The notes under the pieces were generated by a model that was not told where the DNA came from, ran no database searches, and worked only from the letters and a program-made list of their open reading frames with translations. A stretch of 64,000 nucleotides of DNA from Macrostomum lignano (lineage: Eukaryota). Numbering within the stretch: the stretch's first letter is position 1; every line of letters begins with the position of its first letter. Made by a program: the position numbers and the translations under genes. The stretch is from positions 27,886 to 91,885 of the forward strand of contig NIVC01001631.1 of assembly GCA_002269645.1 (NCBI GenBank). Direction: 5' to 3'. Positions 3,291 to 64,000 of the stretch are shown in pieces.

Positions 3291-3401
3291 GAGGTCAGGG
3301 TCAAGCCTTACTCAGATGCGATCACCAGGGTCAGGGAAGGGTCATACAAGGCCCAACCAGGTAACGTTAAGGTGCGAGCCGCTGGTTAACCGCCAGAGTG
3401 G

Positions 3402-6400
3402 GTGAAACCCGGCACCTTGCAGCATCACCGCAGAGCAGTGGCAGTCGCGGTCACGGCGGCAGCGGCAGCGGCAGCGGCCAGCTACTCAAACTCGGACCCC
3501 GTTGCTGGCCAAGGTGTCCGAGGCGTCCTCAGATTTGGTCGGGCCGGCCTCATCGTCGCCCGGGTCGCCGCCGACTACAAATGGAGCCTGTCCGGCCTAG
3601 TCCCGGACAGTCCGGAATACGCGGCCGTCATCGCCGAGGTGCACGAGCGCTCGGCCAACCGGCTGCACCGGCTGTGCTGCGTCAACCGCGGCTGCTTCGT
3701 CAAAGTCGGGCAGCACCTGGCCGCACTTAATTACCTGCTGCCGGAGCCCTACACCCGGGTGCTGGGCCGCCTGCACAGCGACGCGCCGGCCTCCAATATT
3801 GAAGAGGTTCGCCAGGTCATCGAGGAGGACTTTGGCCGGCCGGTGAGAGGGGGGGCGTTTATTGCTTCTGTTCTATCACCACTTCACGTCTGTGACTCTG
3901 ACTTACCAATCCCCACAGGATCCCATCTATCTGTTCCCTTCAGCCCCATTGTCTGATCCCCTCAGCCCCATTCCCTGATCCCCTCAGCCCCATTCCCTGA
4001 TCCCCTCAGCCCCAATCCCTGATCCCCTCAGCCCATTCCCTGATCCCCTCAGCCCATTCCTTGATCCCCTCAGCCCATTCCCTGATCCCCTCAGCCCCAA
4101 TCCCTGATCCCCTCAGCCCCATTCCCTGATCCCCTCAGCCCCATTCCCTGATCCCCTCAGCCCATTCCCTGATCCCCTCAGCCCATTCCCTGATCCCCTC
4201 AGCCCATTCCCTGATCCCCTCAGCCCCATTCCCTGATCCCCAGGCGCACAGCATATTCCGCAGCATCGACCCGTCACCGTGCGGCGCCGCCAGCCTGGCG
4301 CAGGTGCACCGGGCGGAGCTGCTGGACGGCACGCCGGTGGCGGTGAAGGTGCAGCACCCGGACGTGCTGGCCAGGTCCGCGCCGACATGGCCACCATGGA
4401 CTGGCTGGTGGGCCTGGTGTCCCGCCTATTCGTCGACTTTCACTTTCAATGGCTGGTCGACGAGACCCGACGGAATTTGCCGCGCGAGCTGGACTTCGCC
4501 GCCGAGGCCGAGAACATGCGACTGGCCCGGCGGCTGTACTGCGGCCGCTTCCCCTGGCTGGAGGTTCCGGGCGCGGTGGCCGGCCTGGTCAGCAAGCGGG
4601 TGCTGGTCATGGAGCTGTGCCGGGGCGGCCAGATTGACGACCTGGCGTACATCAGCTCCAACCGGCTGGACAGGCGCCAGATTGTGAAGCAGGTGAACCA
4701 GCTGTACAGCTGCATGATGTTCGACTGCGGCTTCGTGCACAGCGACCCTCATCCCGGCAATCTCCTGGTGCGGCCCGACCCTGCACTGCCTTCCGGTTAG
4801 TGCTCGGCTGCTGCTGCTACTGATACTACTGCTGATGATACTACTGCTAATACTTTGATAATACTACTAAAGATACTTCTGATATTACTACTGATAATAC
4901 TACTGATAATACTACTGGTGATACTACTGATGATACTACTGGTGATACTACTGATGATACTACTGATGATACTACTGATGATACTACTGATGATACTACT
5001 GATGATACTACTGATGATACTACTGATGATACTACTGATGATACTACTGATGATACTACTGATGATACTACTGATGATACTACTGATGATACTACTGATA
5101 ATGCTACTGAGATGACACTACTGCTAATACTACTGATAATGCTACTGATAATACTACTGACGATACTACTGACGATACTACTGACGATACTACTGATACC
5201 AATGCTTACACTACCATTCTAACTCAACCATTCGCAGGAGTCCGCATAGTGCTGTTAGACCACGGCCTCTACAACCAGCTGACGCCGGACTTCCGACTCA
5301 GCTACTGCCGGCTGTGGCGCGCCATCATAGACGGCGACTTGGCCGGCATCCGGGCCAGCGCTGACAGCCTGGGCTGCGGCCATCTCTACGGCCTGTTCGC
5401 CTGCATGGTCAGCGGCCGCTCCTGGCGGGCCGTCTCTGCCGGAGTCAGCCGGAGCGAGTTCTCCACTGAGGAGGAGCTGGTAGGCGGACTGAGCTTGAAA
5501 TATTCCCTGTAACATATTTCAGAACTGCCCCATCCCACACCTTAGCATCGCTCCCTATCCCACACCTGACAGCCTCCTCTATCTCACACCTGAGAGCCGC
5601 CCCATCCCACACCTGAGAGCCGCCCCATCCCACACCTAAGAGCCGCCCCATCCCACACCTGAGAGCCGCCCCATCCCACACCTGAGAGCCGCCCCATCCC
5701 ACACCTGAGAGCCGCCCCATCCCACACCTGAGAACCGCCCCATCCCACACCTAAGAGCCGCCCCATCCCACACCTGAGAGCCGCCCTATCCCACACCTGA
5801 GAGCCGCCCCATCCCACACCTAAGAGCCGCCCCATCCCACACCTGAGAGCCGCCCCATCCCACACCTGAGAGCCGCCCCATCCCACACCTGAGAGCCGCC
5901 CCATCCCACACCTGAGAGCCGCCCCATCCCACACCTGAGAACCGCCCCATCCCACACCTAAGAGCCGCCCCATCCCACACCTGAGAGCCGCCCTATCCCA
6001 CACCTGAGAACCGCCCCATCCCACACCTGAGAACCGCCCCATCCCACACCTGAGAGCCGCCCTATCCCACACCTGAGAGCCGCCCCATCCCACACCTGAG
6101 AGCCGCCCCATCCCACACCTGAGAGCCGCCCCATCCCACACCTGAGAGCCGCCCCATCCCACACCTGAGAGCCGCCCCATCCCACACCTGAGAGCCGCCC
6201 CATCCCACACCTAAGAGCCGCCCCATCCCACACCTGAGAGTCGTCCCATCCCACACCTAGAGAGCCGCCCCATCCCACCCAGTCCATTCAGTCGGAGGCC
6301 GGTCGCCTCCTGCCGCAGATGACGCAGGTGCTGGAGTCGGTGCCCCGGCAGATGCTGCTGCTATTCAAAGCCAACGACCTGCTCAGAGGCATCGAGCACC

Positions 6401-6606
6401 GCCTGACGGGCCGGCAGAGGTTCGGGCCCGGCCTGTCTTTCACCCTGCTGACGGACGCCTGCCTGCGCACCCTGGCCGAGGCCAGCTGGGCAGCCGCCGA
6501 CTGGCGCGACTGGCTCCGCCTGCGCTGCCGGCTCTGCCTGATCCGTGCGCTGCTCATCGTCCGGGACCTCTGGGCCGCAGCGGCTGCTTCCGTTGAAAGC
6601 GCTTGA
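3402..6606 (+). CDS. ADCK1: AarF/ABC1 atypical kinase ADCK1; exons ~3402-3842, 4244-4795, 5238-5479, 6283-6606; start codon uncertain; 1-nt frameshift near 4380
   Basis: Motifs NRGCFVKVGQHL, ASLAQVHRA, VAVKVQHP, LPRELDF, FVHSDPHPGN, LLDHGLY and VPRQMLLLFKANDLLRGIE. All three introns are GT-AG with matching phases (0, 1, 0). Confidence 0.9.
3940..4243. repeat. 21/22-bp minisatellite CC(C)ATTCCCTGATCCCCTCAG in ADCK1 intron 1
   Basis: Direct reading; ends at the splice acceptor. Confidence 0.95.
4815..5200. repeat. 12-bp repeat GATGATACTACT in ADCK1 intron 2
   Basis: Direct reading. Confidence 0.95.
5528..6282. repeat. 23-bp minisatellite CACACCTGAGAGCCGCCCCATCC in ADCK1 intron 3
   Basis: Direct reading. 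Confidence 0.95.
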
Positions 6607-42098: not shown

Positions 42099-44450
42099 AT
42101 GGGCTTTGATGTCGACCGATTCGAAGAGGAAGTCAACGAAGGCCTCCTGTGCGCCATCTGCCACGACGTGCTCGAAGACGCCGTCCAGGCCCCGTGTGAG
42201 CACGCCTTCTGCTCGGCCTGCATCCAGGCCTGGCTGCTCGAGGACAACTCCTGCCCGGTTGACCGGCAGATTCTGCTAGCCAGCGAGCTCCGCCAGCTGC
42301 ACCGCTACATGCGGAACGACCTCAACAATCTGCAGATCCGCTGCCAGTACTGGCAGCACGGCTGCCGTGAGAAGGTGCCGCTGGAGACGCTGCACCAGCA
42401 CGAGTCCGCCTGTCCCAGCGAGCCGATGCGCTGCCCAGCCTGCCGGGCGGACACCAGCCGCGGCGAGATGGCCCGCCACCTGCAGATCTGCACCCTGCGC
42501 ACCTCAGCCGTGGTGCCAGCAGCTGACGTTGCCAGACTGTTGGAGGACATGCGATCCGAGCTGGAGGCGGCCAGGCAGGACTTCATGACCAAGCTGGCCG
42601 AGCAGAAGCTCGAGATGGACCTGAGACTCGACGCGCAGCGGCGGCACCTGGTGCAACGGGAGCACTGCCTGCAGGAGCAGCTGGAGGAGATGCGGCGGCT
42701 CTACGCGCGGCTCAGCGAGGTCAGTTTCTCCCTACTGATCTGGTTGGGCATGAGCAACTCGGGCTTTTAGCCTACAGGCCGGCTCTGCGAGGATTACCCG
42801 CCTGACTTGACTGTCTTCTAATCTAAGGGGCGATAAGAACGGGCGGGGCACCAAATACAGAGGGGGCGCCAGCTACAGAGGGGGCGCCAGCTACAGAGGG
42901 GGCACCGGCTACAGAGGGGGCGCCAGCTACAGAGGGGGCACCGGCTACAAAGGGGGCACAGGCTACAGAGGGGGCACAGGCTACAGAGGGGGCACCGGCT
43001 ACAGAGGGGGCACCGGCTACAGAGGAGGCACAGGCTACAGAGGGGGCACAGGCTACAGAGGGGGCACCGGCTACAGAGGGGCACCGGCTACAGAGGGGGC
43101 GCCGGCTACAGAGGGGGCACAGGCTACAGAGGGGGCGCCGGCTACAGAGGGGGCACAGGCTACAGAGGGGGCACAGCCTACAGAGGGGGCACCGGCTACA
43201 GAGGGGGCACAAGCTACAGAGGGGGCACAAGCTACAGAGGGGGCGCCAGAAGTTACAGAGGGGGCGCCGGCTACAGAGGGGGCGCCAAAAGCTACAGAGG
43301 GGGCACAGGGGGCGCCAGCTACAGAGGAGGCACCAAATACAGAGGGGGCACCGGCTACAGAGGGGGCACAAGCTACAGAGGGGAACCGGCTACAGAGGGG
43401 TCGCCAGAAGCTACAGAGGAGGCGCCAGCTACAGAGGGGGCGCCGGCTACAGAGGGGGCACAAGCTACAGAGGGGGCACAGGCTACAGAGGGGGCACAGG
43501 CTACAGAGGGACCGGCTACAGAGGGGGCACAGGCTACAGAGGGGGCACCGGCTACAGAGGGGGCACAGGCTACAGAGGGGGCACCGGCTACAGAGGGGGC
43601 GCCGGCTACAGAGGGGGCACCGGCTACAGAGGGGGCACAAGCTACAGAGGGGGCACAAGCTACAGAGGGGGCACAGGCTACAGAGGGGGCACAGGCTACA
43701 GAGGGACCGGCTACGGAGGGGGCACAGGCTACAGAGGGGGCACCGGCTACAGAGGGGGCACAAGCTACAGAGGGGGCACAGGCTACAGAGGGGGCACCGG
43801 CTACAGAGGGACCGGCTACAGAGGGGGCACAGGCTACAGAGGGGGCACCGGCTACAGAGGGGGCACAGGCTACAGAGGGGGCACCGGCTACAGAGGGGGC
43901 GCCGGCTACAGAGGGGGCACCGGCTACAGAGGGGGCACCGGCTACAGAGGGGGCACCGGCTACAGAGGGGGCGCCGGCTACAGAGGGGGCACCGGCTACA
44001 GAGGGGGCACAGGCTACAGAGGGGGCACCGGCTACAGAGGGGGCGCCAGAAGTTACAGAGGGGGCGCCGGCTACAGAGGGGGCGCCAGAAGCTAGAGAGG
44101 GGGCACAGGGGGCGCCAGCTACAGAGGGGGCGCCAGCCACAGAGGGGGCGCCAGCTACAGAGGGGGCGCCAGCTACAGAGGGGCGCCAGCTACCGAGGGG
44201 GCGCCATGCAGTGTTTCATTTGCAATGACGCCGCATGCAAGACAATCACAAGTAATGACCTGAAAATCTGTGACCGCCTGCATCACCTGTCATCTTACAG
44301 GACATCAAGAAGCTGATTCAGCAGGAGAAAACCAGCCGAACGGAGCTGCAGCGGATGGCGCAGGAGAAGGCGGAGCTTCTCCAAATGCTGCACCAGGCTT
44401 CCCGCTCGCAGGCGGTGCAGAAACTGCCGGAAAAAGTGACAGATTTATGA
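42099..44450 (+). CDS. RNF41(NRDP1)/RNF151-like RING-HC plus TRAF-type zinc finger E3 ligase with C-terminal coiled coil; exons 42099-42719 and 44301-44450, 256 aa
   Basis: MGFDVDRF...CAICHDVLEDAVQAPCEHAFCSACI...CPVDR...YMRNDLNNLQIRC closely follows the RNF41 N-terminus. Phase-0 intron gag|gtcagt...ttacag|gac; stop TGA at 44448-44450. Confidence 0.85.
42860..44205. repeat. 18-bp G-run minisatellite GCTACAGAGGGGGCACCG in the RING gene intron
   Basis: Direct reading. Confidence 0.95.
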
Positions 44451-46415: not shown

Positions 46416-47584
46416 TAATTCATAAGAAAATCTATCAAATTCTCAAAAAATAGCGTCTATGTCCCTAAACTACTGAACTCAAAACTTAAGCAGCCCATGT
46501 CGGCTTTTTGCACAAGTCACAAAAAACAGCGGTCGCACTACCCTGGGAATATAAGATCTATGGATTAGACGAACACATGATGTCATAGAAAACCTAGGTT
46601 ATAGTTTTATATAGCATTTTGCAGTCAAGTTTGAACTGCGGGCATTCAAATTAGACGCTTGACCAGATCTCACTGCTGGCACAAATGCTATCTATGGCCT
46701 AGACAAAATCACACTGGTGGGCACTCAATTTAGACAAGGGGCATTCAAATTAGACAAGTTCTCAGGCGCATTGGCTGGGCAATTCAAGATCGTGTTGCGT
46801 CTGTTGTCAGACAACCATTCTGTGAACCCTGAACTATGAAGATAAGAACAAGTTATAACAAAGTAAGCATGTGTGAACAAACAAAACAGGGTGCTCAGCA
46901 CATCAATGAACAAGAAGCGATTCCCGCATTTGCCCGAGTGTCATCAGAGGGTTGGCATTCAACAAGGCGGCCAGATGGTCCTTCATTGCAGGATTCATTC
47001 GACGGTGCCTGGCTCCTCCCCTTGGTAGCGCGTATCGCTGGCCATCCTGAACAAACTTGTTCCAGATGTTGTACACTGATGATCTCTTGACATCCAACAT
47101 GTTGGCAATTTCAGCCACAGAGTCACCACGTTGGCATGCCCCAATAATGAGGTCACGCTTCTCTCTGGAAATTCTTGCATAGCGACGAATCGGATTGTCC
47201 ATGGTCTTTCTCTCTGGCACACATAGACTTTCCGCTGCTTGTCTAAATTGAGTGCCCGTCAGTGTGTTTCAGTTTGTGCCACAGAGATAAAGTTCTGCTT
47301 GACTTGGGGACGGATTCTGAAATTTGGCTCTTCCCTTCTTGTCTAATTTGAATGCCCGCAGTTCAAACTTGACTGCAAAATGCTATAATAATTTTAGCTG
47401 TCTTGAGCCATAGATCTTTATATCCCCTAGATAGGCCACTTTGTATGGCGGCAATAGGGAAGTGCTACCGCTGCTTTTCGTCACTTGTGCGAAAAAGTCG
47501 ACATGGGTTGCTTTAATTTTGAGTTCAGTAGCTTAGGGACATTGACGCTATTTTTTGAGAATTTGATTTCGCATTCTATGTATT
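46416..47584. mobile_element. Foldback/MITE-like element with long diverged inverted arms (~46416-46565 and ~47408-47584), interrupted by the Tc1-like element
   Basis: AAATTCTCAAAAAATAGCGTC...CACTACCCT on the left is the reverse complement (about 85% by eye) of AGGGAAGTGC...GACGCTATTTTTTGAGAATTT on the right. GATCTATGG/CCATAGATC inner arms also pair. No TSD resolved. Confidence 0.6.
46612..47385 (-). mobile_element. Internally deleted Tc1/IS630-like DNA transposon (774 bp)
   Basis: Perfect 45-bp TIRs (46612-46656 / 47341-47385), TA on both flanks, and internal repeats of GGCAYTCAAWTTAGAC. ORF 46903-47220 encodes an HTH-type N-terminus (ISREKRDLII...SVAEIANMLDVKRSSVYNI...PRGG). No DDE domain. 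Confidence 0.8.
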
Positions 47585-47908: not shown

Positions 47909-48301
47909 TCAAGCACTGTTTGTCTCCTTTACAAATCGATGGATACTAGCCCGAAAGCCACGAATCGTATCCGGTGCATAGGTCTTCGTTCCAAGCGCAG
48001 GATTAGCTCGCAGACTTACGTACCAGAGGCGCAGATAGCCGTCTAAGTAGCTTTCAATGTCATCAGGCAGGTTTTTCTCTCGAAGAAATTTCTTGAACCG
48101 ATTAATTTGATTCTTAGTGGTTGCTAAGGTGGATGCCGACTTTGACGACTGTTCAAGTCGTTTGATGTCCTCTAGTTCTTGTACATCTAAGTCGCGATAC
48201 GAATCTTCCTGAGTCCGTAGTTCCGCCAAAAACGTTTCCACGTCATTGAGGTTCAGGATTGGCAATCCCGACCACTGATCGACAGACGTCTTCGCGCTCA
48301 T
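47909..48301 (-). mobile_element. Crypton-like (tyrosine recombinase transposon, DUF3504-associated) N-terminal fragment, truncated
   Basis: STLATTKNQINRFKKFL...LDGYLRLWYVSLR...KTYAPDTIRGFRASIHRF fits the recalled pattern preceding DUF3504 in CryptonA and in the KCTD1/QRICH1/ZMYM families. No catalytic region seen. Confidence 0.65.
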
Positions 48302-49929
48302 GGACGCAGTTTGGACATGAATTCCAATTCAGCACTATCCAAGCGGACCAAGCCACTAATATCGCCAGTGGCGATTCTTTGCAAATTGATCATGCCTCGT
48401 GCTCAATAATTTGTGCTCGTGCTTGTTGACTTCCATATATATATTCGCTCTTTTCTTCAGGATTCTACCAGCTGTTGCAAAAATACAGTTTAAAAAGCCT
48501 GAGTATTACCACAGACTAAAGTGGCGGGCAGGAATGAATTCCGTGCCCGCTAGTTTCGTCTATGGTTAATGCTTAGTGGCGCCCTCGAAATGATGAGACA
48601 ACACAGTTCTGTCTATGCATTTTCGGGCAGAAATGAGACGGAATCCTCGTCTGCTTCGCAGACCTCGGATTTCGCTCGTTCCTGCCCTCAAATCCATAGA
48701 CAGAACCATTAGTTAATGAGTGGCCCATCTTGTGTATCTGCGATCTTTGGCTTGAGCATTCCAGTAAAAATGGTGACCTCAGTCCGGAATCTTTGAAGAC
48801 GCCCCTCGTACTGAATATAAACACACAGATGTTGTCCTGCTCTATCGGTGAAATCAACCAGCTGTTTAATGAGCGTTCCAGTCTAATTTTAGCTGCAGAT
48901 TTGTCTATGGTCGGAAAGCAAGAGTCCAGAGGATTAATAGCAATATTGGCTCCCCATGTTAGCTCGTCAATCAATACTCATTGAAGCACTTGCTGCAATG
49001 ATTGTGATTCGAAAGTCTAGAGGGTGAGACATTGTGATAAATCCAAGTGCTGAGAATAAACACTGAAAACTTTCCATCTTGCTAATTGATGCATTTTGCA
49101 GCTAAAACCAGCGCCTCAGCGAAATTGCCACGACTTGCATGATTTTCTACTATCAGTAGCAGTGCAATAACTTAAAAAACAAACAAACAAAAAAACAAGT
49201 CAATTAATCTCTGGCTAAATAGAAATAAATTTGTTATAAACAGTCAAAAAACCAGGGAATTATCAATTGAAAACAAGTCAGAAAAGCATTCCATAGCAAA
49301 TATGGATTATTATACAAGCAAAAGAAACCGCAGCAGCAGCAGCAATAATTGGCGCGCAGCAAACTAAAGAAGCTATAAAAATAAACTGACTGTTCCCAAG
49401 AAAAGCCAGGTGCAAAAAGAACACCAAAAAGAAAATAAAACACACAAACTATTCGAAACACGAGACAGATGGATGGACATTTACAACATCACTCATTTTC
49501 ATACGGAGTTGGAGATCAATATGAGCAGTCCTGATGCGAAAACGATAGTAGAAAATACTAAACCGCTGGAATATACGCTCGTAATTAATAATTCGTGCAT
49601 AAATGAGATTTTATGATTAAAAAATGTAGAAAGCATGATGGCTTATAAAAATAAAACCAATTCTGTTCCATGTCAATCAATACTACACAGTGTAATAACT
49701 AAAGCATGAATTGTGTACAGGACTGGCAGGCAGATTAAGCAAATGGCATTGAAACATTGACAATCCGATGCGGCACAGGAGAAATAAGCGGATATTGTTG
49801 GCAAACCCCCCCCCCCCGATTCTTGACACAACAGTTGTTAAAAATTGACGCAATTTGTCGCAAAATAAAAGGATTGACGATTGTTCTATCAGGACTTGTT
49901 GCCCAACTGGTTTTTAAGTTCTTTTCAAG

Positions 49930-52557: not shown

Positions 52558-53235
52558 TCACGAGCAGCAGCCGCTGCCGTCTTCAGTTTCCCCAGTCCCG
52601 TTTGCGGTCAGGCGGACAGCTGCTGCTGACGCAGACGAGTTCACTCCCCGTCCAACCCGGACACCGTCCCAGGCTGGCGACATGCCGGCGTAACGGCCGG
52701 CCATAAGCAGGCAGTAGACCCGCTCGGCCAGGCTGCGGAAACAGGCCTCAACATTGTGACCGCTGATCGCGCTGGTCTCAATATAAGCCAACCCAAGCTG
52801 CTCGGCCAATCCGGACGCTTCGTCCAGGCTAACCGTCCGCTGGCCGGACATGTCCGCCTTCTGGCCAACTAGCAGCAGGCCCGGATCCGGACAAGTCATA
52901 TTCAAACGGGCCTCCTTAAGCCAAGCTGACACGCTACTAAAACTATCCCGATTAGTGACGTCAAAGACAATGAGAGCGGCTACTGCATTGCGATAATAAG
53001 AGCGAGTGATGGACCGGAACTTCTCGTGGCCGGCCGTGTCCCACAGGGTCAGCTTGATCCGGCTGCCGTCCGGCAGTTGAACTAGGCGAGCAAAGAAATC
53101 AACACCGACCGTGGCTTCGCAGGCCGTGTCGGCTGAGCCTTCGACAAAATAGCGAACTAGGGACGACTTGCCAACCATGGTGTCGCCAATGATGATCACC
53201 CTGAACTGGTAATCGAACAGCGGCCCGGGCAGCAT
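52558..53235 (-). CDS. Rab39: Intronless Rab39/Rab42-like small GTPase, 225 aa
   Basis: YQFRVIIIGDTMVGKS, TVGVDFFARLV, WDTAGHEKFRSITRSYYRN, GQKAD, ETSA, the WDGVRVG motif typical of Rab39, and a C-terminal CCS prenylation signal. Confidence 0.85.
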   Translation of the reverse strand: MLPGPLFDYQFRVIIIGDTMVGKSSLVRYFVEGSADTACEATVGVDFFARLVQLPDGSRIKLTLWDTAGHEKFRSITRSYYRNAVAALIVFDVTNRDSFSSVSAWLKEARLNMTCPDPGLLLVGQKADMSGQRTVSLDEASGLAEQLGLAYIETSAISGHNVEACFRSLAERVYCLLMAGRYAGMSPAWDGVRVGRGVNSSASAAAVRLTANGTGETEDGSGCCS

Positions 53236-56028: not shown

Positions 56029-58860
56029 CTACCACAATTTGGGATATTCGTCCGGTAGCAAAGAATAATTCCGACAGGTGGGACACACTGAGCACTCCTG
56101 AAACCAGCGACGAATACAGGCGTCGTGAAACAGGTGATCACAGTCTAGCCGGCGCACCTGTTCCTTCTGCGGGTTCAAGCTGTCCAGACAGACAATGCAG
56201 GTGTCCTCTTCGGCGCTGCCAGAAACAGTTGCTGAAGTTCTGCTGGCATTGCTTCCGTTTAACTTGTAGGCAGCACCGCCATTGGACTGCTGCTGCTGTC
56301 TATGCCGAAGGTGCTGCTGCTTAGCCTGATGCTTATCGATCAGAATATTAATTAATTGTTGCTCAATTTGAGCACCAGGCCTGACGGTCATGCTGGCTAA
56401 GGCCTGACTAACCTGATCAACTGTCACGTACGGCAGTATCTGAAATGAAGCAAATTTTTAAATCGTTCAAAAGTTTTTCAATGTCGAAGCTCTCCGACAC
56501 TAACTATAGTACTCCATCATATCGTAGTAAGATGCTCAAATTTATTATGCCAAATTGAAAATTACCGAGGTTTGGACAGCTGGCATCAGTCAAAAAGTTC
56601 GAAATCAAATAAAATATCTTTAATATCGCTGAGCCTCTCTGCAGCAGAAGCTGCAGAACTCTCCAGACTCCATGTTTACAGGGTGCTCAAATTTGACTAT
56701 TGTTAGAGGTCTTGAATTCTAATAATTAAAAAATTATTGACATTTAAAAAACGTGGCTCAGCCCCAATTTTGAATTTTACTGGCTGTTCCTTGGGTACAC
56801 ATTGTTCCACCACGCTATCAAAGCCTCAATATCATTCCTAGCAATTCTTAGAAACTACAAATTTCATAATGTCACGAATTTCGCTTGCTTGTGAAGCAAT
56901 CCACTAGCATCACCAAGAATTTAACTTTGGGTCTTTACCGCAGATACTAGAATAACTAGATAAGATGGGCCACTCAGCACATTTGCGTGTAGGCTACTTT
57001 CAGTTCAGTAGTAAGTTAACAGAAGCATTTTAATGTATTTTAAAGCCCAGGCTCATTTATTGGCTCTTACATCCCCCTCCCCAAGCTTAAACCCTCTAAC
57101 CGCGGCCTTTCCACGCTACCCCGCCCCACCCCCCAATTTTTATTGCCTTTCTCGGAGTTCCAGCCTAAAGCTGCTATGTACATTTCAGTGAACTGGCTAA
57201 TGTACATTATTGCTGAACCAATTAGCAAGTTGTTTACGCCTAGAAGTTGGGCTTCTAAACTTATCAAAGTCAGCTGCCTTTATTTTTATAAAATAGCTTA
57301 TGTATTCTTCTTTGCTACTGAACTGAAAGTAGAAAGCAATTTTACCAAGTATATATGCCTGAGTGGCATATCTATAGTTATTTTTGTATCTGTGGTCTTA
57401 ACTCACGAAAATATTCTCAAGTTTCAGAGGAAATGCTATAGTGACTGTACAAGGTCAAAACCTAAATTTAGTTCATCCAAAAAATTCTTTCTTTATTTGT
57501 TGCCTCTACAAAGAGGGGGGAAGGCGCAGATTGCTAGCCTCGGTGCTAAATATTTTCCTACCTTTTGCACCACAGGCATGTACTTTAGTGCGCCTCTCTG
57601 CTGCTCGGTCAGATCTCCATGAGCGCTGGCAGTCGTGCCGGCTCGCGGACCAATTGGACCAGGCAGGCTGTTGCAAGGCAAGCTGACGTTAACTGATCTC
57701 GGCCGAGCAGCCGGAGTCGCGGCCTGCGGCGGCTGCAATGAAGGCGGTGGCGGCGGCGGCGGCATCTGCTGCTGCTGCTGTTTAGCAGTTTCCGCCTCGA
57801 GCTTCAGCGCTTTTAGGTCTGGCTTTCGTGGCGAGCGAGGCACCAATTTTTGGAATTGAGTCTTCACGTTGGCCGCCTTGAATTCTTCTTGCGTGTCAAG
57901 TTTGGACCTGGGCGCAAACAGAAAAAGAAGATTTGAAGCTATTTGATATTTCAGTGCACAATCAGAACAACTGCTTTTAATTTGGGAGTATGAAAGTTAA
58001 AGCCATTCTTTATTCACTCATCCCATCCGGTCACTACGTTTTTGCCTATGGGATTGGGCACAAGTTGTGGCTGGATTAATAATGTACAAAGTGTTAAAAA
58101 TGCTCAGATATTTAAGAAAAGTGTATGAGAATAAACAAAGAAAAATAACAACAAAAAAGATAGTATTGAGCAGGATCCTTCGTGCAGTAGTCGTATCTCC
58201 GACACTTCATATCTCCGACAAGCTTAACCCTAACTCCAAGCTTAAGCTTTAACTCTAACGGAGATATGAAGTTTCAGGGACATGAACCCCCTTTATTGGC
58301 ATGGCTGTTACTTAATAGTGCCATCGCTGACGGCATGACTGAGTCAGGTGACTCAGCGAAGTGGTCTTGCTTAATTGATATAGCTTGTACATAAAATAAG
58401 TATTTTCTAAGCGCGAAATAACTCAATACTTAGATTTCTGGGCCAAACACTTACCGGCAGTCGGTGCGCAGCTGTTTTAGCGCGATCCGGCTCTGATCTA
58501 GTTCGGTGCAAAACTCAACCCAGATTTGCTCAGCCGCTGTTAGCGCAGCCGTATGAATAGCTCCAGCCGCCGCCTCATTTAACGATGCTATAACAGCTCT
58601 GGCGTCATTTTCGCGCTCCTTAACCATGCTCATAGCTAGCAGATAGTGCAGATCGACTACCTCGCTTTTAAATTCTTTAGAGGCTTCAGCAGACTCGGCG
58701 CAGGCCAACGAAAACGCATCGCGTTGTTGTCGCAGAGCGTCATTCTCTCGACGCAATGTGGCAACTTGATCGCGCAAACTATCGGTCTCGTTCTTTAATA
58801 GGTTTATAGGGCATCGCGGCGAACAGGGCTGCATTTATTTGGCTTTCGCTGGGAAGGCGG
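56029..58860 (-). CDS. DZIP3/TTC3-type coiled-coil plus C-terminal RING-H2 E3 ligase; exons ~58860-58455, 57907-57562, 56439-56029; 5' end unresolved
   Basis: RING-H2 CIVCLDSL...LDCDHLFHDACIRRWFQECSVCPTCRNYSLLPDEYP resembles the recalled DZIP3 C-terminus (CPTCRLHVLLPEEFP). Junctions cg|gtaagt...ccag|g and aag|gtagga...ttcag|ata are phase-consistent. There is an upstream coiled-coil exon. Confidence 0.7.
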
Positions 58861-60630: not shown

Positions 60631-63522
60631 TTAACAGTTGCAGCCGTTTGCCTGCTTGTCGCGGCCTTCCTGCAGACGAGTGCCTGCGAACAACAGAATA
60701 AAAGCACAAGAGTTGATTCTAAAACTATGCACACTTGTTTGCATGTGGCTACTATGAGTACTAGATATATGCTGAATCTTGAGTTTGCAATTCACTAGCC
60801 CGATGATGCTAACTAAAACAAAAAACTGTTGGATTTATGCATCAATGTGCACTATATTAGCGTTAGCGCTTATTGGTGTTAGCTAAAAGTACAATTTATG
60901 TTGAATCGTGTCTCAAACTCAAAGTACACAAGCCTATTGATGATATCTAAAAGTGCAAGAGGATTAATTCCATCTAAAAGTACACTAGACTGACGGTGAT
61001 AAGCTAAAAGTGCACGAGAAAATTAAATTCATCTAAAAGTATATAAGCTTGCTGATTATAGCTAAAAGTGCGCGAGAGAATGAACTTCAATCTAAAAGTA
61101 AACTAGCCTGCTGATGATAGCTAAAAGTGCAGATGCTAAACTAAATCTTACTCACCGGCCCCGGCAGCCAAATTAGGATCGCACTCCAGCGATTCGGCCA
61201 TCTTGTCGCAGATGACGTCAACCAGTCGTTCGAATACGGCTTTGACGTTGATATTCTCTTTAGCGGAAGTCTCAAAGAACTCGAGGCCTGCAGATATTTC
61301 AGCAATGATAAAATATACTCACTTTTAATTGAAATGTCGGAATATTTTTACTAGATAGTTTATCAGAAAAACACTGCTGATTAAAAATTTAAGAAATGTT
61401 ATAATATTAATTCACACTAAATAGTTCCGACATTTTAGGCCACATTAGCAGTTACGAGGAGGATCTCAAATATAAGAATTTCAGCATTTACCAATCTCTT
61501 CAGCCAATCGCTGGCCGCTTAATTCGCTAATAACTCGATAGTCAGCTAGATCGCACTTGTTGCCAACCAGAACTATGGTGGCATCGTGCCAAGCGTGGGC
61601 TCTGATCTGAGTACACCTTTAGAATAAGTCAGTAATAAGTATCTTTTAACAACAGATAACATTCCAAGAGAAATAGAAAAATACGCTTAGGGATATTAGA
61701 AAACAAATGCATTAAATTCACTAAGCAATATAGGAAATGCACAGCACTTACTCCTAACTCATTTCATGCATCAGTTGCATAGGAGTGACATTTAATTTTG
61801 CTCCTAGCATATAAATCGACAGAATAAGACTTATTTAACAATGGATTTCAGTGGAACAGAGTTCAAGCGTGGCAGCTCCGAGAGGGAGATCACAGTTGGG
61901 AGAATCCCGGAGGGGGAATCCCTAAAGAGGAATCTCTACAGGAGACTCCCTAAAAGGGGAATCCCGAAAGGGGAATTCTAAAAGGGAATCCCTAAAGTGG
62001 AATCCTTAAAGGGGAATCCCTAAAGTGGAATCCTTAAAGGGGAATCCCTAAAGGGGAATCCCTAAAGGGGAATCCCTAAAGGGGAATCCCTAAAGGGGAA
62101 TCCCTAAAGGGGAATCCCTAAAGGGAATCCCTAAAGGGGAATCCCTAAAGGGGAATCCCTAAAGGGGAATCCCTAAAGGGGAATCCCTAAAGGGGAATCC
62201 CTAAAGGGGAATCCCTAAAGGGGAATCCCTAAAGGGGAATCCCTAAAGGGGAATCCCTAAAGGGGAATCCCTAAAGGGGAATCCCTAAAGGGGAATCCCT
62301 AAAGGGGAATCCCTAAAGGGGAATCCCTAAAGGGGAATCCCTAAAGGCGAATCCCTAAAGGGGAATCCCTATAGGGGAATCCCTAAAGGGGAATCTCTAA
62401 AGGGGAATCCCTAAAGGGGAATCCCTAAAGGGGAATCCCTAAAGGGGAATCGCTAGAGGGACATTTTTAAATCAAAATCAGAAAGGGGGAATCCAAAGGG
62501 GAATCTATAAAGTGGAGTCCTAACTAAAAATCTCTAAGGATTTTCTCCACAGGAATTTCCATATATCCGGATAAGAGACCTTAGCAGGGGAATCGCAAAC
62601 AAAGAACTTTTCAAATGTTTTTCTCGAATCGCCACCGTACAATATATAATAAGAAAACACAAATACGGTATATAAACACTTATCTTGTGTTCAATGCCAT
62701 TTTCCGCAAGAAATTGTATCTTTTACACAAAAGTAGAATAGAAGAAGCACAAAAGATTGAAAAACATTAATCACTAATAAAAAGATGGCAATGAAGCAAG
62801 TGAACTGCGGTACAATACCCAGATCATGTGCCAGCCTAGCACCGCGCTCAATGGAGACAATGCGACTATCCTCTAAATCGCACTTGTTACCAATTAGAGC
62901 AATTTTGGCTGTGGACCAGGAGTGAGTCTGTATTGCCGTCACCCTGGGCATGGTAGCGATGCGTATGAGAGGCACCTTTGTTTTAAATAAAACACATGTA
63001 ATAGAAATAAAATCTAAAACGACGAATCCAGTTTTTTAGAAAAAAGGCAAAAAACCATCAAAGAAATAATCAGTTGAACAGCAGGAATACCAATTTGTAC
63101 TGTTTATACCGACATATACTCAGCAAGTTTCAATTCCTCGGAATTCAAAATGCTATTTAAAGATATTCCAATGGGATGTCTATCAAAATCATCAGCGCGG
63201 AATCCTCACTCAAATCACGCTTTGGTAGTTGGTACTTTCACTCTTAACTGTTGACTATCAAACTTTAATAAAAAGAACAGTCCAAACAAATTCACCGAAC
63301 CGGAATAAAGAAAAAAGTTAATCGAAGAAGAAAAACTACGCTCGTAATTTGAACCAAAAAACACCGGGATTTTTTAGGGCTTAGAAATTCGCACCGAGCT
63401 CATTTGCCAGCTTTTGCGCCGTTTTGGTGTCGACTCGGCGCTGACCTGGCTGGCAGTCGCACTTGTTGCCTACCAATACAACAACGGCGCCTTGCCAGGC
63501 CTGACCGCGCACCAGCGTCACC
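60631..63522 (-). CDS. Rab3: Rab3, 3' portion (N-terminal exons not found in the window): alternative exons 63522-63395 / 62943-62819 / 61616-61492, then 61287-61156 and 60683-60631
   Basis: [33 protein letters not shown] is a Rab3 signature. The last exon ends GCNC* (CxC prenylation motif). All junctions are GT-AG with consistent phases. Confidence 0.9.
60800..61135. repeat. Old degenerate ~30/59-bp repeat with CTAAAAGT core in the last Rab3 intron
   Basis: CTAAAAGT recurs about every 30 bp. Confidence 0.7.
61492..61616 (-). CDS. Rab3: Rab3 alternative exon variant B (125 nt): [41 protein letters not shown]
   Basis: taaag|G...G|gtaaat; phase 2 in, phase 1 out. Confidence 0.85.
61905..62455. 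repeat. 14-bp minisatellite GGGGAATCCCTAAA between Rab3 alternative exons B and A
   Basis: Direct reading, ~35 near-perfect units. Confidence 0.95.
62819..62943 (-). CDS. Rab3: Rab3 alternative exon variant A (125 nt): [41 protein letters not shown]
   Basis: cccag|G...G|gtattg; phase 2 in, phase 1 out; partly visible in ORF 62691-62975. Confidence 0.85.
63395..63522 (-). CDS. Rab3: Rab3 alternative exon variant C (128 nt): [42 protein letters not shown]
   Basis: taaag|G...G|gtgcga; phase 2 in, phase 1 out; this frame is not shown in the ORF track. Confidence 0.8.
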
Positions 63523-63649
63523 CTTTAGTTGTGTGTGCGTGTGCGGTTTTAGAAGACGCAGGTGGTTGGGGTTGAAGTAAACTAATAAACTGTACACTAA
63601 AGCAAACTCTAGCCCCGACTTTATGTGGACCAGCCGGCAATATCTTGTC

Positions 63650-63860
63650 ATAGCAAGATCTGTGTATCCCAGCCCTACCCCCACCCCATATAAAAGGGAA
63701 CGAGATTCTATGTACGCCAGCCCTACCCCCACCCCAAATAAAAGGGGACGAGATTTTATGTACATCAGCCCTACCCTCAAATAAAAGGGGACGAGATTCT
63801 ATGTACGCCAGCCCTGTCCCAGGACGAGAATCTATGTACCGCCAGCCCTCACCCTGGCCC
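63650..63860. repeat. ~48-bp degenerate tandem repeat (AGCCCTACCCCCACCCCAAATAAAAGGGGACGAGATTCTATGTACGCC)
   Basis: Direct reading, ~4 units. Confidence 0.8.
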
Positions 63861-64000
63861 TCAGATAGATAGATACCGTGAAGGGGACAAGATTTCACGT
63901 ACGCTCGTAAATTTTATTAATTTTAGCTAGGGAGAAGACTAAGGGAGAAGAAAGCGAAGAGATAAAGAAATCAGACGCTACGAAGTTAACTCCAGCTAAA

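What the first reader, a model, noticed from the sequence alone, without database searches (positions are those of the whole stretch)
61492..63522. Rab3 with three tandem, phase-matched copies of the effector-loop/NKxD exon: probable mutually exclusive exon cassette
Seen: three homologous exons on the minus strand (63522-63395, 128 nt; 62943-62819, 125 nt; 61616-61492, 125 nt). Each has AG|G...G|GT boundaries, phase 2 in and phase 1 out, no stop codon, and an intact (I/V)GNKCD. Only one downstream FFETSAK exon and one CxC exon follow. Including zero, two (250 or 253 nt) or three (378 nt) copies breaks the frame, so only single inclusion gives Rab3. Established: the alpha3/beta5 loop (TYSWDNA in Rab3A) is part of the RabCDR that contacts rabphilin. 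Here it reads THSWSTA, AHAWHDA or GQAWQGA, keeping only the Trp. Inference: one gene yields three Rab3 isoforms with different effector specificity. I recall mutually exclusive exons for Rab6A/A' but not for Rab3; this is not literature-checked. More copies could lie beyond base 64000.
Basis: partly seen in the sequence, partly recalled or inferred. Interest (0 to 1): 0.88.

Follow-up and report, generated by a model that had tools for sequence, protein, structure and literature searches.

The report
Three alternative exons in flatworm Rab3
The Rab3 gene of the flatworm Macrostomum lignano carries three tandem, interchangeable copies of one exon, an expanded form of a two-exon switch found across several spiralian animal groups; this is a familiar kind of alternative splicing, and use of two of the three copies is still unproven.

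Summary
Three homologous 125/128-nt exons lie on the minus strand, each with ag|G…G|gt borders, one open frame and an intact GNKCD. One LEFFETSAK exon and one …GCNC* exon follow.

The window is Macrostomum lignano Rab3, or a near-identical haplotype. Two M. lignano loci from GCA_002269645.1 show one gene: two shared upstream exons, then A, B, C, then the two downstream exons. The shared upstream exon ends about 284 nt beyond base 64000. There is no fourth copy.

Only single inclusion keeps the frame. Every other combination gives a stop codon 116–377 nt before the last exon junction.

All public M. lignano models use exon C only. I could not test whether A and B are used.

The same exon is duplicated in Rab3 of bdelloid rotifers, bryozoan-like contigs and an unidentified lophotrochozoan. 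A non-canonical "THAW" version occurs in spliced Rab3 models of about a dozen molluscs, Lingula and Watersipora. Rotifer transcripts carry either copy, never both.

This is therefore a three-copy member of an old spiralian Rab3 exon switch. It is visible in automated annotation, but I found no paper describing it. Different effector binding by the isoforms is plausible but untested.

The parts
63395..63522 (-). Alternative exon A (128 nt): [42 protein letters not shown](G). It is the most divergent copy, has one extra codon and is not annotated in M. lignano.
   Evidence: Searches give the sequence. The acceptor is …caactaaag|G and the donor G|gtgcga, which matches 4 of 6 positions of GTRAGT. 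GC is 0.62 and GC3 0.69. The protein is identical in L088 and L089. It shares [10 protein letters not shown] with the bryozoan-like and Lingula variant exons.
62819..62943 (-). Alternative exon B (125 nt): [41 protein letters not shown](G). It is not annotated in M. lignano.
   Evidence: Searches give the sequence. The donor G|gtattg matches 3 of 6 consensus positions. The nucleotides are 100% identical in L088. It is 62% identical to the mollusc 'THAW' variant exon of Batillaria.
61492..61616 (-). Alternative exon C (125 nt): [41 protein letters not shown](G). This is the copy used in all public M. lignano Rab3 models.
   Evidence: Searches give the sequence. The donor G|gtaaat matches 5 of 6 consensus positions. 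P0361 (PAA74454.1) equals window exon C plus the downstream exons exactly.
61156..61287 (-). Shared downstream exon (132 nt): (G)[43 protein letters not shown](G). It holds the G5 SAK motif and helix alpha5.
   Evidence: The donor G|gtgagt matches 6 of 6 consensus positions.
60631..60683 (-). Last coding exon: (G)[16 protein letters not shown] plus the TAA stop. It ends in a CXC prenylation motif.
62944..63394 (-). Intron between exons A and B (451 nt, GC 0.35).
   Evidence: No Rab exon lies inside it.
61617..62818 (-). Intron between exons B and C (1202 nt). It contains the minisatellite (GAATCCCTAAAGGG)x40 at 61902-62460.
61288..61491 (-). Intron between exon C and the LEFFETSAK exon (204 nt, GC 0.28).
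63523..64000 (-). 3' part of the intron between the shared upstream exon (outside the window) and exon A. It contains a 48-nt tandem repeat at 63669-63815.
   Evidence: Window base 64000 aligns to L089 position 9132, and the upstream exon E2 ends at L089 position 8848.

Best explanation
This is the 3' half of the single Rab3 gene of Macrostomum lignano, seen in the public annotation as BOX15_Mlig010871g2 at locus L089 and its near-identical copy BOX15_Mlig029172g2 at locus L088.

Shown:
- One ancestral exon has been multiplied into three tandem copies, A, B and C. It encodes the end of helix alpha3, the alpha3/beta5 loop (RabCDR2/RabSF3), strand beta5, the NKxD guanine-binding motif and helix alpha4.
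- The copies lie between a single upstream exon ending …QDW and a single downstream exon starting LEFFETSAK.
- Each copy is 2 mod 3 in length. Only mRNAs with exactly one copy encode Rab3. Every other combination runs into an early stop that should make the mRNA a target of nonsense-mediated decay.

Inferred:
- C has the strongest donor, lies next to the downstream exon and is the only copy in public models, so it is probably the default.
- A and B have weak donors, like regulated alternative exons. They are probably chosen in particular cells or stages.
- The resulting Rab3 isoforms would share the nucleotide pocket, switch regions and lipid anchor. They would differ on the surface formed by the alpha3/beta5 loop and helix alpha4. 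In mammalian Rab3A that loop is part of the pocket that holds the SGAWFF element of rabphilin.

The cluster is a three-copy derivative of an older two-copy arrangement (a canonical YSWDNAQ exon plus a 'THAW/THSW' exon). That arrangement occurs in rotifers, bryozoan-like contigs, molluscs and a brachiopod. M. lignano has no canonical copy.
For: Anatomy in the window:
- Exon borders, phases and open frames.
- No other Rab3 exon between the copies.
- Premature stops for every combination other than single inclusion.

One gene:
- L088 and L089 (M. lignano GCA_002269645.1) each show E1, E2, A, B, C, D and a last exon, with no fourth copy.
- The window is 96.5-97% identical to them overall. Against L088 the unique introns differ by 0-3%.
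- Synteny is shared: a RING gene and an intronless Rab follow in both.

Long-term constraint on all three copies:
- Synonymous sites among the copies are near or at saturation (pS 0.54-0.83) while core residues and GNKCD are kept.
- All three are exon-like GC islands.

It is Rab3:
- Best solved-structure matches are Rab3C, Drosophila Rab3, Rab3A, Rab3B and Rab3D, with E-values from 1e-35 to 1e-25.
- Pfam Ras scores 4e-62.

The homologous cluster works as mutually exclusive exons elsewhere:
- Rotifer genomic loci L001, L003 and L004 hold two copies.
- Spliced transcripts L002 and L050 carry only the variant copy. Transcript L049 and the spliced sequences P0096 and P0118 carry only the canonical copy.
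- Between two rotifer loci dN/dS is 0.32 for the variant copy and 0.07 for the canonical copy.

Other two-copy loci and variant-only models:
- Two-copy loci with identical phase occur in L067/L075, L071/L072 and L058/L062.
- Spliced variant-only Rab3 models exist for about a dozen molluscs, Lingula and Watersipora, plus one assembled transcript, P0269.

The region matters for effector binding: RabCDR2 corresponds to RabSF3 and contacts rabphilin (PMC9308819, PMC4552854).
Against: - No transcript or protein model with exon A or B was found for M. lignano. All three public models use C.
- The exact look-up of hypothetical isoforms found nothing, but it also missed the exon C control, so it is uninformative.
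- The window and L088 differ by only 0-3% in unique introns, and L089 is equally close overall. Comparing them cannot test selection on A and B: there are 0-2 differences per exon.
- A and B have poor donors and A has a purine/AC-rich acceptor tract. That also fits decaying exons.
- No intron-intron RNA pairing of the docking/selector type stood out.
- In Drosophila, mutations in the Rab3 CDR regions did not disrupt Rab3 function at the neuromuscular junction (PMC4552854). A change in this loop need not change function.
Confidence: 0.6

Rival explanations
1. Exon C is constitutive, and A and B are relics of old tandem duplications that the spliceosome now ignores. The gene then makes a single Rab3 protein.
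For: Every public M. lignano model uses C only. A and B have weak donors, matching 4 of 6 and 3 of 6 consensus positions, against 5-6 of 6 for C and the constitutive exons. No cross-species data exist for A and B.
Against: The copies diverged long ago, with synonymous sites near or at saturation. Both A and B still have an open frame, intact ag/gt borders, the exact length class, GNKCD and the conserved core residues. Both keep exon-like GC in AT-rich introns. An unused exon would be expected to lose these features. The homologous second exon is used in rotifers and is present in spliced models of molluscs, a brachiopod and a bryozoan. One model per gene was deposited for M. lignano, so the absence of A and B isoforms there says little.
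Confidence: 0.25
2. A and B act mainly as 'poison' exons. Including them together with C shifts the frame and sends the mRNA to nonsense-mediated decay, which tunes the Rab3 level rather than making new proteins.
For: A+C, B+C, A+B and A+B+C all give early stops 213-377 nt upstream of the last junction.
Against: A poison exon needs no conserved protein sequence. A and B nevertheless keep a full Rab-compatible reading frame and motifs in the productive frame. In rotifers the second copy is found alone in complete open reading frames.
Confidence: 0.07
3. The three exons belong to three neighbouring Rab genes, each with its own other exons.
For: None found.
Against: There is only one LEFFETSAK exon and one CXC exon in the window. 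There is only one E1 and one E2 upstream in L088 and L089. The spacing between copies is 451 and 1202 nt with no other coding matches.
Confidence: 0.01

Closest known systems
Two-copy alternative exon of Rab3 in other Spiralia. It appears in automated isoform predictions for molluscs, Lingula and Watersipora, in rotifer and bryozoan-like genomic contigs, and in rotifer transcripts. I found no paper describing it.
   Same: It is the same gene and the same exon, with the same intron phases and length (125 nt). It has a single flanking …QDW exon and a single LEFFETSAK exon, and one copy per mRNA. The variant copies share His in place of the canonical Tyr (T-H-A/S-W), as do M. lignano exons B and C.
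   Different: M. lignano has three copies instead of two, and none has the canonical KTYSWDNAQ. The order also differs among lineages. The variant comes first in the bryozoan-like contigs and in the Batillaria and Nucella models. The canonical copy comes first in rotifers. One origin or several cannot be decided from 42 residues.
RAB6A / RAB6A' mutually exclusive exons in mammals (from my own knowledge, not checked here).
   Same: A Rab GTPase gene with a duplicated internal exon, one copy per mRNA. The isoforms differ in a few surface residues and in partner binding.
   Different: A different Rab and a different exon, near the switch II/G3 region. There are two copies differing at three residues, against 50-62% divergence here.
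RAB37 tandem-exon-duplication substitution (PMC8373072).
   Same: A Rab with a pair of homologous alternative exons. That paper traces the event back beyond the human-Drosophila split. It maps the differing residues to a surface patch and proposes that this lets the isoforms bind different proteins.
   Different: A different gene, and the paper passages I read do not say which exon. It has two copies and is documented in vertebrates.
Multi-exon mutually exclusive clusters of Drosophila (Dscam1, 14-3-3zeta, mrp), cited in PMC8373072.
   Same: More than two tandem homologous exons with one chosen per mRNA.
   Different: From my own knowledge, those clusters rely on competing intronic RNA pairings (docking and selector sites). 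I found no such pairing here. The only safeguard visible here is the reading frame.

Membership tests
Rab3 subfamily of small GTPases | Ras/Rab G domain | tested here: met
   P0361 is the M. lignano model that matches the window's exon C, exon D and last exon. It scores Pfam PF00071 Ras at E = 4.4e-62.
Rab3 subfamily of small GTPases | Closest relatives are Rab3 proteins rather than other Rabs | tested here: met
   The window-encoded 102 residues match Rab3C, Drosophila Rab3, Rab3A (1ZBD, 3RAB), Rab3B and Rab3D, with E-values from 1e-35 to 1e-25. Only Rab3 chains passed the 1e-15 cutoff. All of the roughly 340 protein hits I inspected were Rab3-type.
Rab3 subfamily of small GTPases | G4 NKxD and G5 (E)TSAK nucleotide-binding motifs | tested here: met
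   GNKCD is present in each of A, B and C, and ETSAK is present in the shared exon.
Rab3 subfamily of small GTPases | C-terminal CXC double-cysteine prenylation motif | tested here: met
   The protein ends …GCNC*.
Rab3 subfamily of small GTPases | Canonical subfamily motif in the alpha3/beta5 loop (KTYSWDNAQ, RabSF3/RabCDR2) | tested here: not met
   The loop reads [16 protein letters not shown] and GQAWQGAV in B, C and A. Only the Trp is kept. The rest of the protein is orthodox Rab3, so this is a divergent loop, not a different family.
Mutually exclusive exon cluster made by tandem exon duplication | Adjacent homologous exons of the same length class and the same intron phases | tested here: met
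   The exons are 128, 125 and 125 nt, with a phase-2 intron before and a phase-1 intron after each. They are 38-50% identical in protein.
Mutually exclusive exon cluster made by tandem exon duplication | Single constitutive exons on both sides, within one gene | tested here: met
   The downstream exons lie in the window. The upstream exons are seen in M. lignano loci L088 and L089.
Mutually exclusive exon cluster made by tandem exon duplication | Joint inclusion or skipping is non-productive | tested here: met
   All seven other combinations give premature stops more than 50 nt before the last junction.
Mutually exclusive exon cluster made by tandem exon duplication | Mature mRNAs exist for each copy, one copy per mRNA | not testable with these tools
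   For M. lignano only C-containing models exist, and no transcript data could be reached. For the homologous rotifer pair the feature is met.
Mutually exclusive exon cluster made by tandem exon duplication | Each copy conserved between species under purifying selection | tested here: inconclusive
   The only M. lignano comparisons available are loci whose unique introns differ from the window by 0-3%, with 0-2 differences per exon. In rotifers dN/dS of the variant copy is 0.32. The 'THAW' signature recurs across phyla.
Docking-site/selector RNA competition mechanism (Dscam-type) | One intronic docking sequence complementary to a selector next to each variant exon | tested here: inconclusive
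   Only short AT-rich inverted repeats of 75-92% complementarity were found. No duplex energy beat shuffled controls, the best fraction being 0.08. No second species was available to test conservation.

The most novel reading that the evidence does not exclude
Rab3, the core synaptic-vesicle GTPase, carries an ancient isoform switch found across spiralian phyla that the literature has not described. Alternative versions of the exon encoding RabCDR2/RabSF3 and helix alpha4 would direct the same GTPase to different effectors, for example rabphilin or RIM-I versus RIM-II. RIM-II is reported as broadly conserved among Lophotrochozoa, on the evidence of several molluscs and the brachiopod Lingula, and as not identified in flies and nematodes (PMC7456537). 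In Macrostomum the switch would have expanded to three positions and the canonical version would have been lost, so that all three isoforms are expressed in distinct cell types.
Probability: 0.3. Interest if true: 0.65.

Novelty: new member of a known kind. Interest (0 to 1): 0.45.

Why it matters
Rab3 is one of the most conserved proteins of regulated secretion. In animals outside Spiralia that I sampled, the loop KTYSWDNAQ is almost invariant.

A sizeable part of the animal tree keeps a second version of exactly this loop and helix alpha4 as an alternative exon. One flatworm keeps three versions and no canonical one. This suggests that Rab3 effector choice is set by splicing in these animals.

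M. lignano is a transgenic, RNAi-tractable model, so isoform-specific knock-down and tagging are feasible there.

There is also a practical point for annotation. Exons A and B are missing from every public M. lignano model I retrieved. Several public models in other species wrongly string both alternative exons into one protein.

Tried and rejected
- First protein search with exon B plus the downstream exons. It found no close relative. The tool appears to drop targets longer than about 1.75 times the query, so full-length Rab3 proteins were missed. A full-length chimeric profile solved this.
- Exact look-up of the intronless Rab ORF of the window: not on record.
- Exact look-up of hypothetical M-start isoforms A, B and C in two allelic forms. 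None is on record, including the exon C control, so the result is uninformative.
- Look-up of the Lingula isoform locus: not on record.
- Docking/selector RNA pairing: inverted-repeat scans and duplex energies against shuffles (one search timed out). There was no signal.
- Bootstrap tree of the exon peptides. It timed out. I judged 42 residues too few for a tree and used pairwise identities and signature residues instead.
- dN/dS between the window and L088. It has no power, because the unique introns differ by only 0-3%.
- The idea that a canonical fourth copy lies beyond base 64000 is rejected by L088 and L089.
- Schistosoma japonicum, Dimorphilus and Mytilus loci show a single canonical copy in the DNA retrieved. 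For Mytilus and Schistosoma the shared upstream exon was not in the DNA retrieved, so a distant upstream copy cannot be excluded.
- Literature searches for a Rab3 mutually exclusive or duplicated exon found nothing specific.
Full report
**What is in the sequence**

Three homologous exon-like segments lie on the minus strand at exactly the coordinates given. A is 63522-63395 (128 nt), B is 62943-62819 (125 nt) and C is 61616-61492 (125 nt). Each follows an ag and precedes a gt. Each begins with the G that completes a Trp codon and ends with the first G of a Gly codon. Each is open in one frame only.

The peptides are [43 protein letters not shown] (A), [42 protein letters not shown] (B) and [42 protein letters not shown] (C).

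A tblastn scan of the whole window finds these three copies and one LEFFETSAK exon. I place that exon at 61287-61156 (132 nt) and the final coding exon at 60683-60631, ending GCNC-stop. No other Rab3 exon lies between the copies.

**Whose gene it is**

ADCK1-like exons at the other end of the window match a Macrostomum lignano protein at 82% identity. The next best hit is 49%.

A profile of chimeric full-length isoforms then retrieved M. lignano Rab3 models. PAA74454.1 (P0361, BOX15_Mlig010871g2) equals the window's exon C plus both downstream exons, residue for residue.

I fetched the two M. lignano loci, L088 and L089, from assembly GCA_002269645.1. They are 96.5-97% identical to the window over 9 kb. 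Most differences lie in tandem arrays. Against L088 the unique introns differ by 0-3%. The loci also share gene order with the window: a RING gene and an intronless Rab follow Rab3.

The window is therefore M. lignano, or a haplotype, duplicated copy or sibling species.

**Gene structure**

Both loci show the whole gene:
- E1, with the start MGSRDAADQ…
- E2, 119 nt, ending …NAVQDW
- A, B and C
- the LEFFETSAK exon
- the last exon

E2 ends about 284 nt beyond window base 64000. Nothing resembling a fourth copy lies in the E2-A intron. It is one gene with exactly three copies. The 'separate genes' alternative is refuted, and so is the suggestion of more copies outside the window.

**Frame logic**

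I spliced E1 and E2 (taken from L089) to each combination of copies. Only A, B or C alone gives a Rab3 protein, of 211, 210 and 210 residues. Skipping all three, or including A+B, A+C, B+C or A+B+C, gives a stop 116-377 nt upstream of the last exon junction. That is the usual condition for nonsense-mediated decay.

Donor sites grade as follows against GTRAGT:
- constitutive exons: 6 of 6
- C: 5 of 6
- A: 4 of 6
- B: 3 of 6

This pattern fits C as the default exon and A and B as regulated exons. It also fits decay of A and B.

**Are A and B maintained?**

- The copies are 38-50% identical in protein. Synonymous sites among them are near or at saturation (pS 0.54-0.83), so the duplications are old.
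- Despite that age, all three keep the Trp, the beta5 hydrophobic run, GNKCD, the Arg after it, and the L-A…L-G of helix alpha4. These positions are invariant or nearly so across the 33 exon sequences I aligned.
- All three are GC islands (0.62, 0.50 and 0.50) in unique intron sequence of 0.28-0.35 GC. The constitutive neighbour is 0.53.
- These points argue for long-term purifying selection on each copy.
- They cannot exclude recent loss of use. The available M. lignano copies are too similar to test selection, with 0-2 differences per exon.

**Expression in M. lignano**

All three public models use exon C only: PAA74454.1, PAA51520.1 and UniProt A0A1I8HI31. The UniProt model is fused to the neighbouring RING gene. 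One model per gene was deposited, so this says little about A and B.

I could not reach any M. lignano transcript assembly. Exact look-ups of hypothetical isoforms failed, including the exon C control. Use of A and B is therefore not shown.

**The same exon is duplicated in Rab3 elsewhere**

A read-through protein call from a metagenome (P0089) first revealed a compact Rab3 gene with two tandem copies of this exon. It matches Adineta steineri. The Adineta loci L003 and L004 show the same arrangement.

A metagenome scan returned 80 Rab3 loci. Two copies lie between a single …QDW exon and a single LEFFETSAK exon, with identical ag|G…G|gt borders and a length of 125 nt, in three further groups:
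- L067/L075
- L071/L072
- L058/L062

**Transcript evidence**

Spliced transcripts from bdelloid-like organisms carry one copy or the other. L002 and L050 hold only the THSWEK variant. L049 holds only the canonical MYSWDNAQ copy, as do the spliced sequences P0096 and P0118.

These transcripts come from different species or duplicated gene copies, since L049 and L050 are 78% identical. The case rests on genomic loci that always hold both exons together with mRNAs that always hold one.

**Annotated isoforms**

The full-length search showed that a non-canonical 'THAW' version of the exon sits in spliced Rab3 models of many taxa:
- Molluscs: Batillaria, Littorina, Liolophura, two Haliotis species, Pecten, Ylistrum, Mizuhopecten, Gigantopelta, Saccostrea, Babylonia and Patella.
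- The brachiopod Lingula.
- The bryozoan Watersipora. Its exon is of the L067 type, so L067 and L071 are probably bryozoans.
- One assembled transcript, P0269.

Models from Batillaria, Nucella, Didymodactylos and Adineta contain both copies in a row. That shows the genomic order and is an annotation error.

**Taxa with a single copy**

Dimorphilus has a single canonical copy between its flanking exons. The Schistosoma japonicum and Mytilus DNA retrieved also shows only one copy. All arthropod, nematode, tardigrade and deuterostome sequences inspected have only the canonical exon.

**Selection on the variant copies**

Variant copies evolve faster than canonical ones but are constrained. In rotifers dN/dS is 0.32 for the variant and 0.07 for the canonical copy. 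In the bryozoan-like pair pN is 0.30 against 0.06, with synonymous sites saturated.

**Where M. lignano fits**

- None of A, B or C has the canonical KTYSWDNAQ.
- B (THSW) and C (AHAW) carry the His that marks variant exons elsewhere.
- A shares [10 protein letters not shown] with the bryozoan-like and Lingula variants.
- By position, A corresponds to the 'variant first' exon of the bryozoan-like contigs and the mollusc models. C corresponds to the canonical exon next to LEFFETSAK. This is inference. Forty-two residues cannot resolve a tree.
- Whether M. lignano has a second Rab3 gene with a canonical loop is unknown. None appeared among the 120 best hits, but that is not proof of absence.

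**What the exon encodes**

The exon aligns to rat Rab3A residues 117-158. This is my own count on the sequence as I recall it, consistent with the known T36, Q81 and N135 positions. The stretch covers the end of alpha3, the alpha3/beta5 loop, beta5, NKxD and alpha4.

The loop corresponds to RabCDR2/RabSF3. It is one of three regions that form the pocket for the SGAWFF element of rabphilin in structure 1ZBD (PMC9308819; PMC4552854, citing the original structure). Isoform-specific effector binding is therefore plausible.

It is untested here. CDR mutations did not disturb Rab3 function at the fly neuromuscular junction (PMC4552854).

**Mechanism of exclusivity**

I looked for competing intron pairings of the Drosophila type and found none that beats chance. 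The only safeguard visible is the reading frame.

The B-C intron holds a 40-copy 14-nt minisatellite that folds strongly as RNA (-284 kcal/mol, z = -4). Whether this matters for splicing is unknown.

**Known or new**

Mutually exclusive exons made by tandem duplication are a well-known class. Among small GTPases they are described for RAB6A/A' (my own knowledge) and RAB37 (PMC8373072). I found no paper on such exons in Rab3. The two-copy form is nevertheless present in automated annotations.

The M. lignano cluster is a new, three-copy, unannotated member of that kind.

**Verdict**

- Observation: confirmed.
- Interpretation: partly supported.
- Interest: moderate (0.45).
- Confidence that at least two of the three exons are used in mature mRNAs: about 0.6.

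Noticed in passing
window 1-64000: About 42% of the window is minisatellite arrays with periods of 11-62 nt, many of them 0.5-2.4 kb long and lying inside or between genes.
   Followed up: partly
window 61902-62460 (intron between exons B and C): A (GAATCCCTAAAGGG)x40 array. As minus-strand RNA the region folds to -284 kcal/mol (z = -4.0 against 20 shuffles). The same array is present with a different copy number in M. lignano loci L088 and L089. A possible effect on splicing was not tested.
   Followed up: partly
window 52558-53235 (-): An intronless 225-residue Rab-like ORF (Pfam Ras 3.9e-47). It is syntenic with a 225-residue gene at L088 23850-24527. Its subfamily was not determined.
   Followed up: partly
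window ~56032-58834 (-) and protein P0362: Exons of a RING-H2 finger gene lie downstream of Rab3. UniProt A0A1I8HI31 (479 aa) joins Rab3 exons E1 to D with this RING gene, which is probably a wrongly merged gene model.
   Followed up: partly
window 42099-42770 (+): A single 223-residue ORF with a C3HC4 RING finger and weaker TRAF/Sina-type zinc-finger matches.
   Followed up: no
window 3390-6603 (+): Exons of an ADCK1-like ABC1 atypical kinase, 82% identical to M. lignano BOX15_Mlig000296g7. Long tandem arrays lie in its introns.
   Followed up: partly
window 46906-47268 (-) and 47912-48328 (-): The first ORF is a fragment with transposase-type helix-turn-helix domains (weak Sleeping Beauty-type match). 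The second is a 139-residue ORF with no Pfam match.
   Followed up: no
proteins P0246, P0248, P0264, P0273: Public Rab3 models of Batillaria, Nucella, Didymodactylos and Adineta include both alternative copies of the exon in one protein, joined by translated intron. These are likely annotation errors.
   Followed up: partly
L058 1658-2505; L062 1934-2748: An unidentified lophotrochozoan Rab3 locus has two near-canonical copies of the exon (…MYSWDNAQ…CDAED… and …TYSWDNAQ…CDLED…). This is a different flavour of the same duplication.
   Followed up: no
window 63337-63350 and 63900-63913: A 14-nt direct repeat, TACGCTCGTAA(T/A)TT, lies on both sides of exon A. It could be chance or a trace of the duplication unit.
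   Followed up: no
(method): The homologous-protein search returned no target longer than about 1.75 times the query length. Short queries therefore miss full-length relatives.
   Followed up: yes
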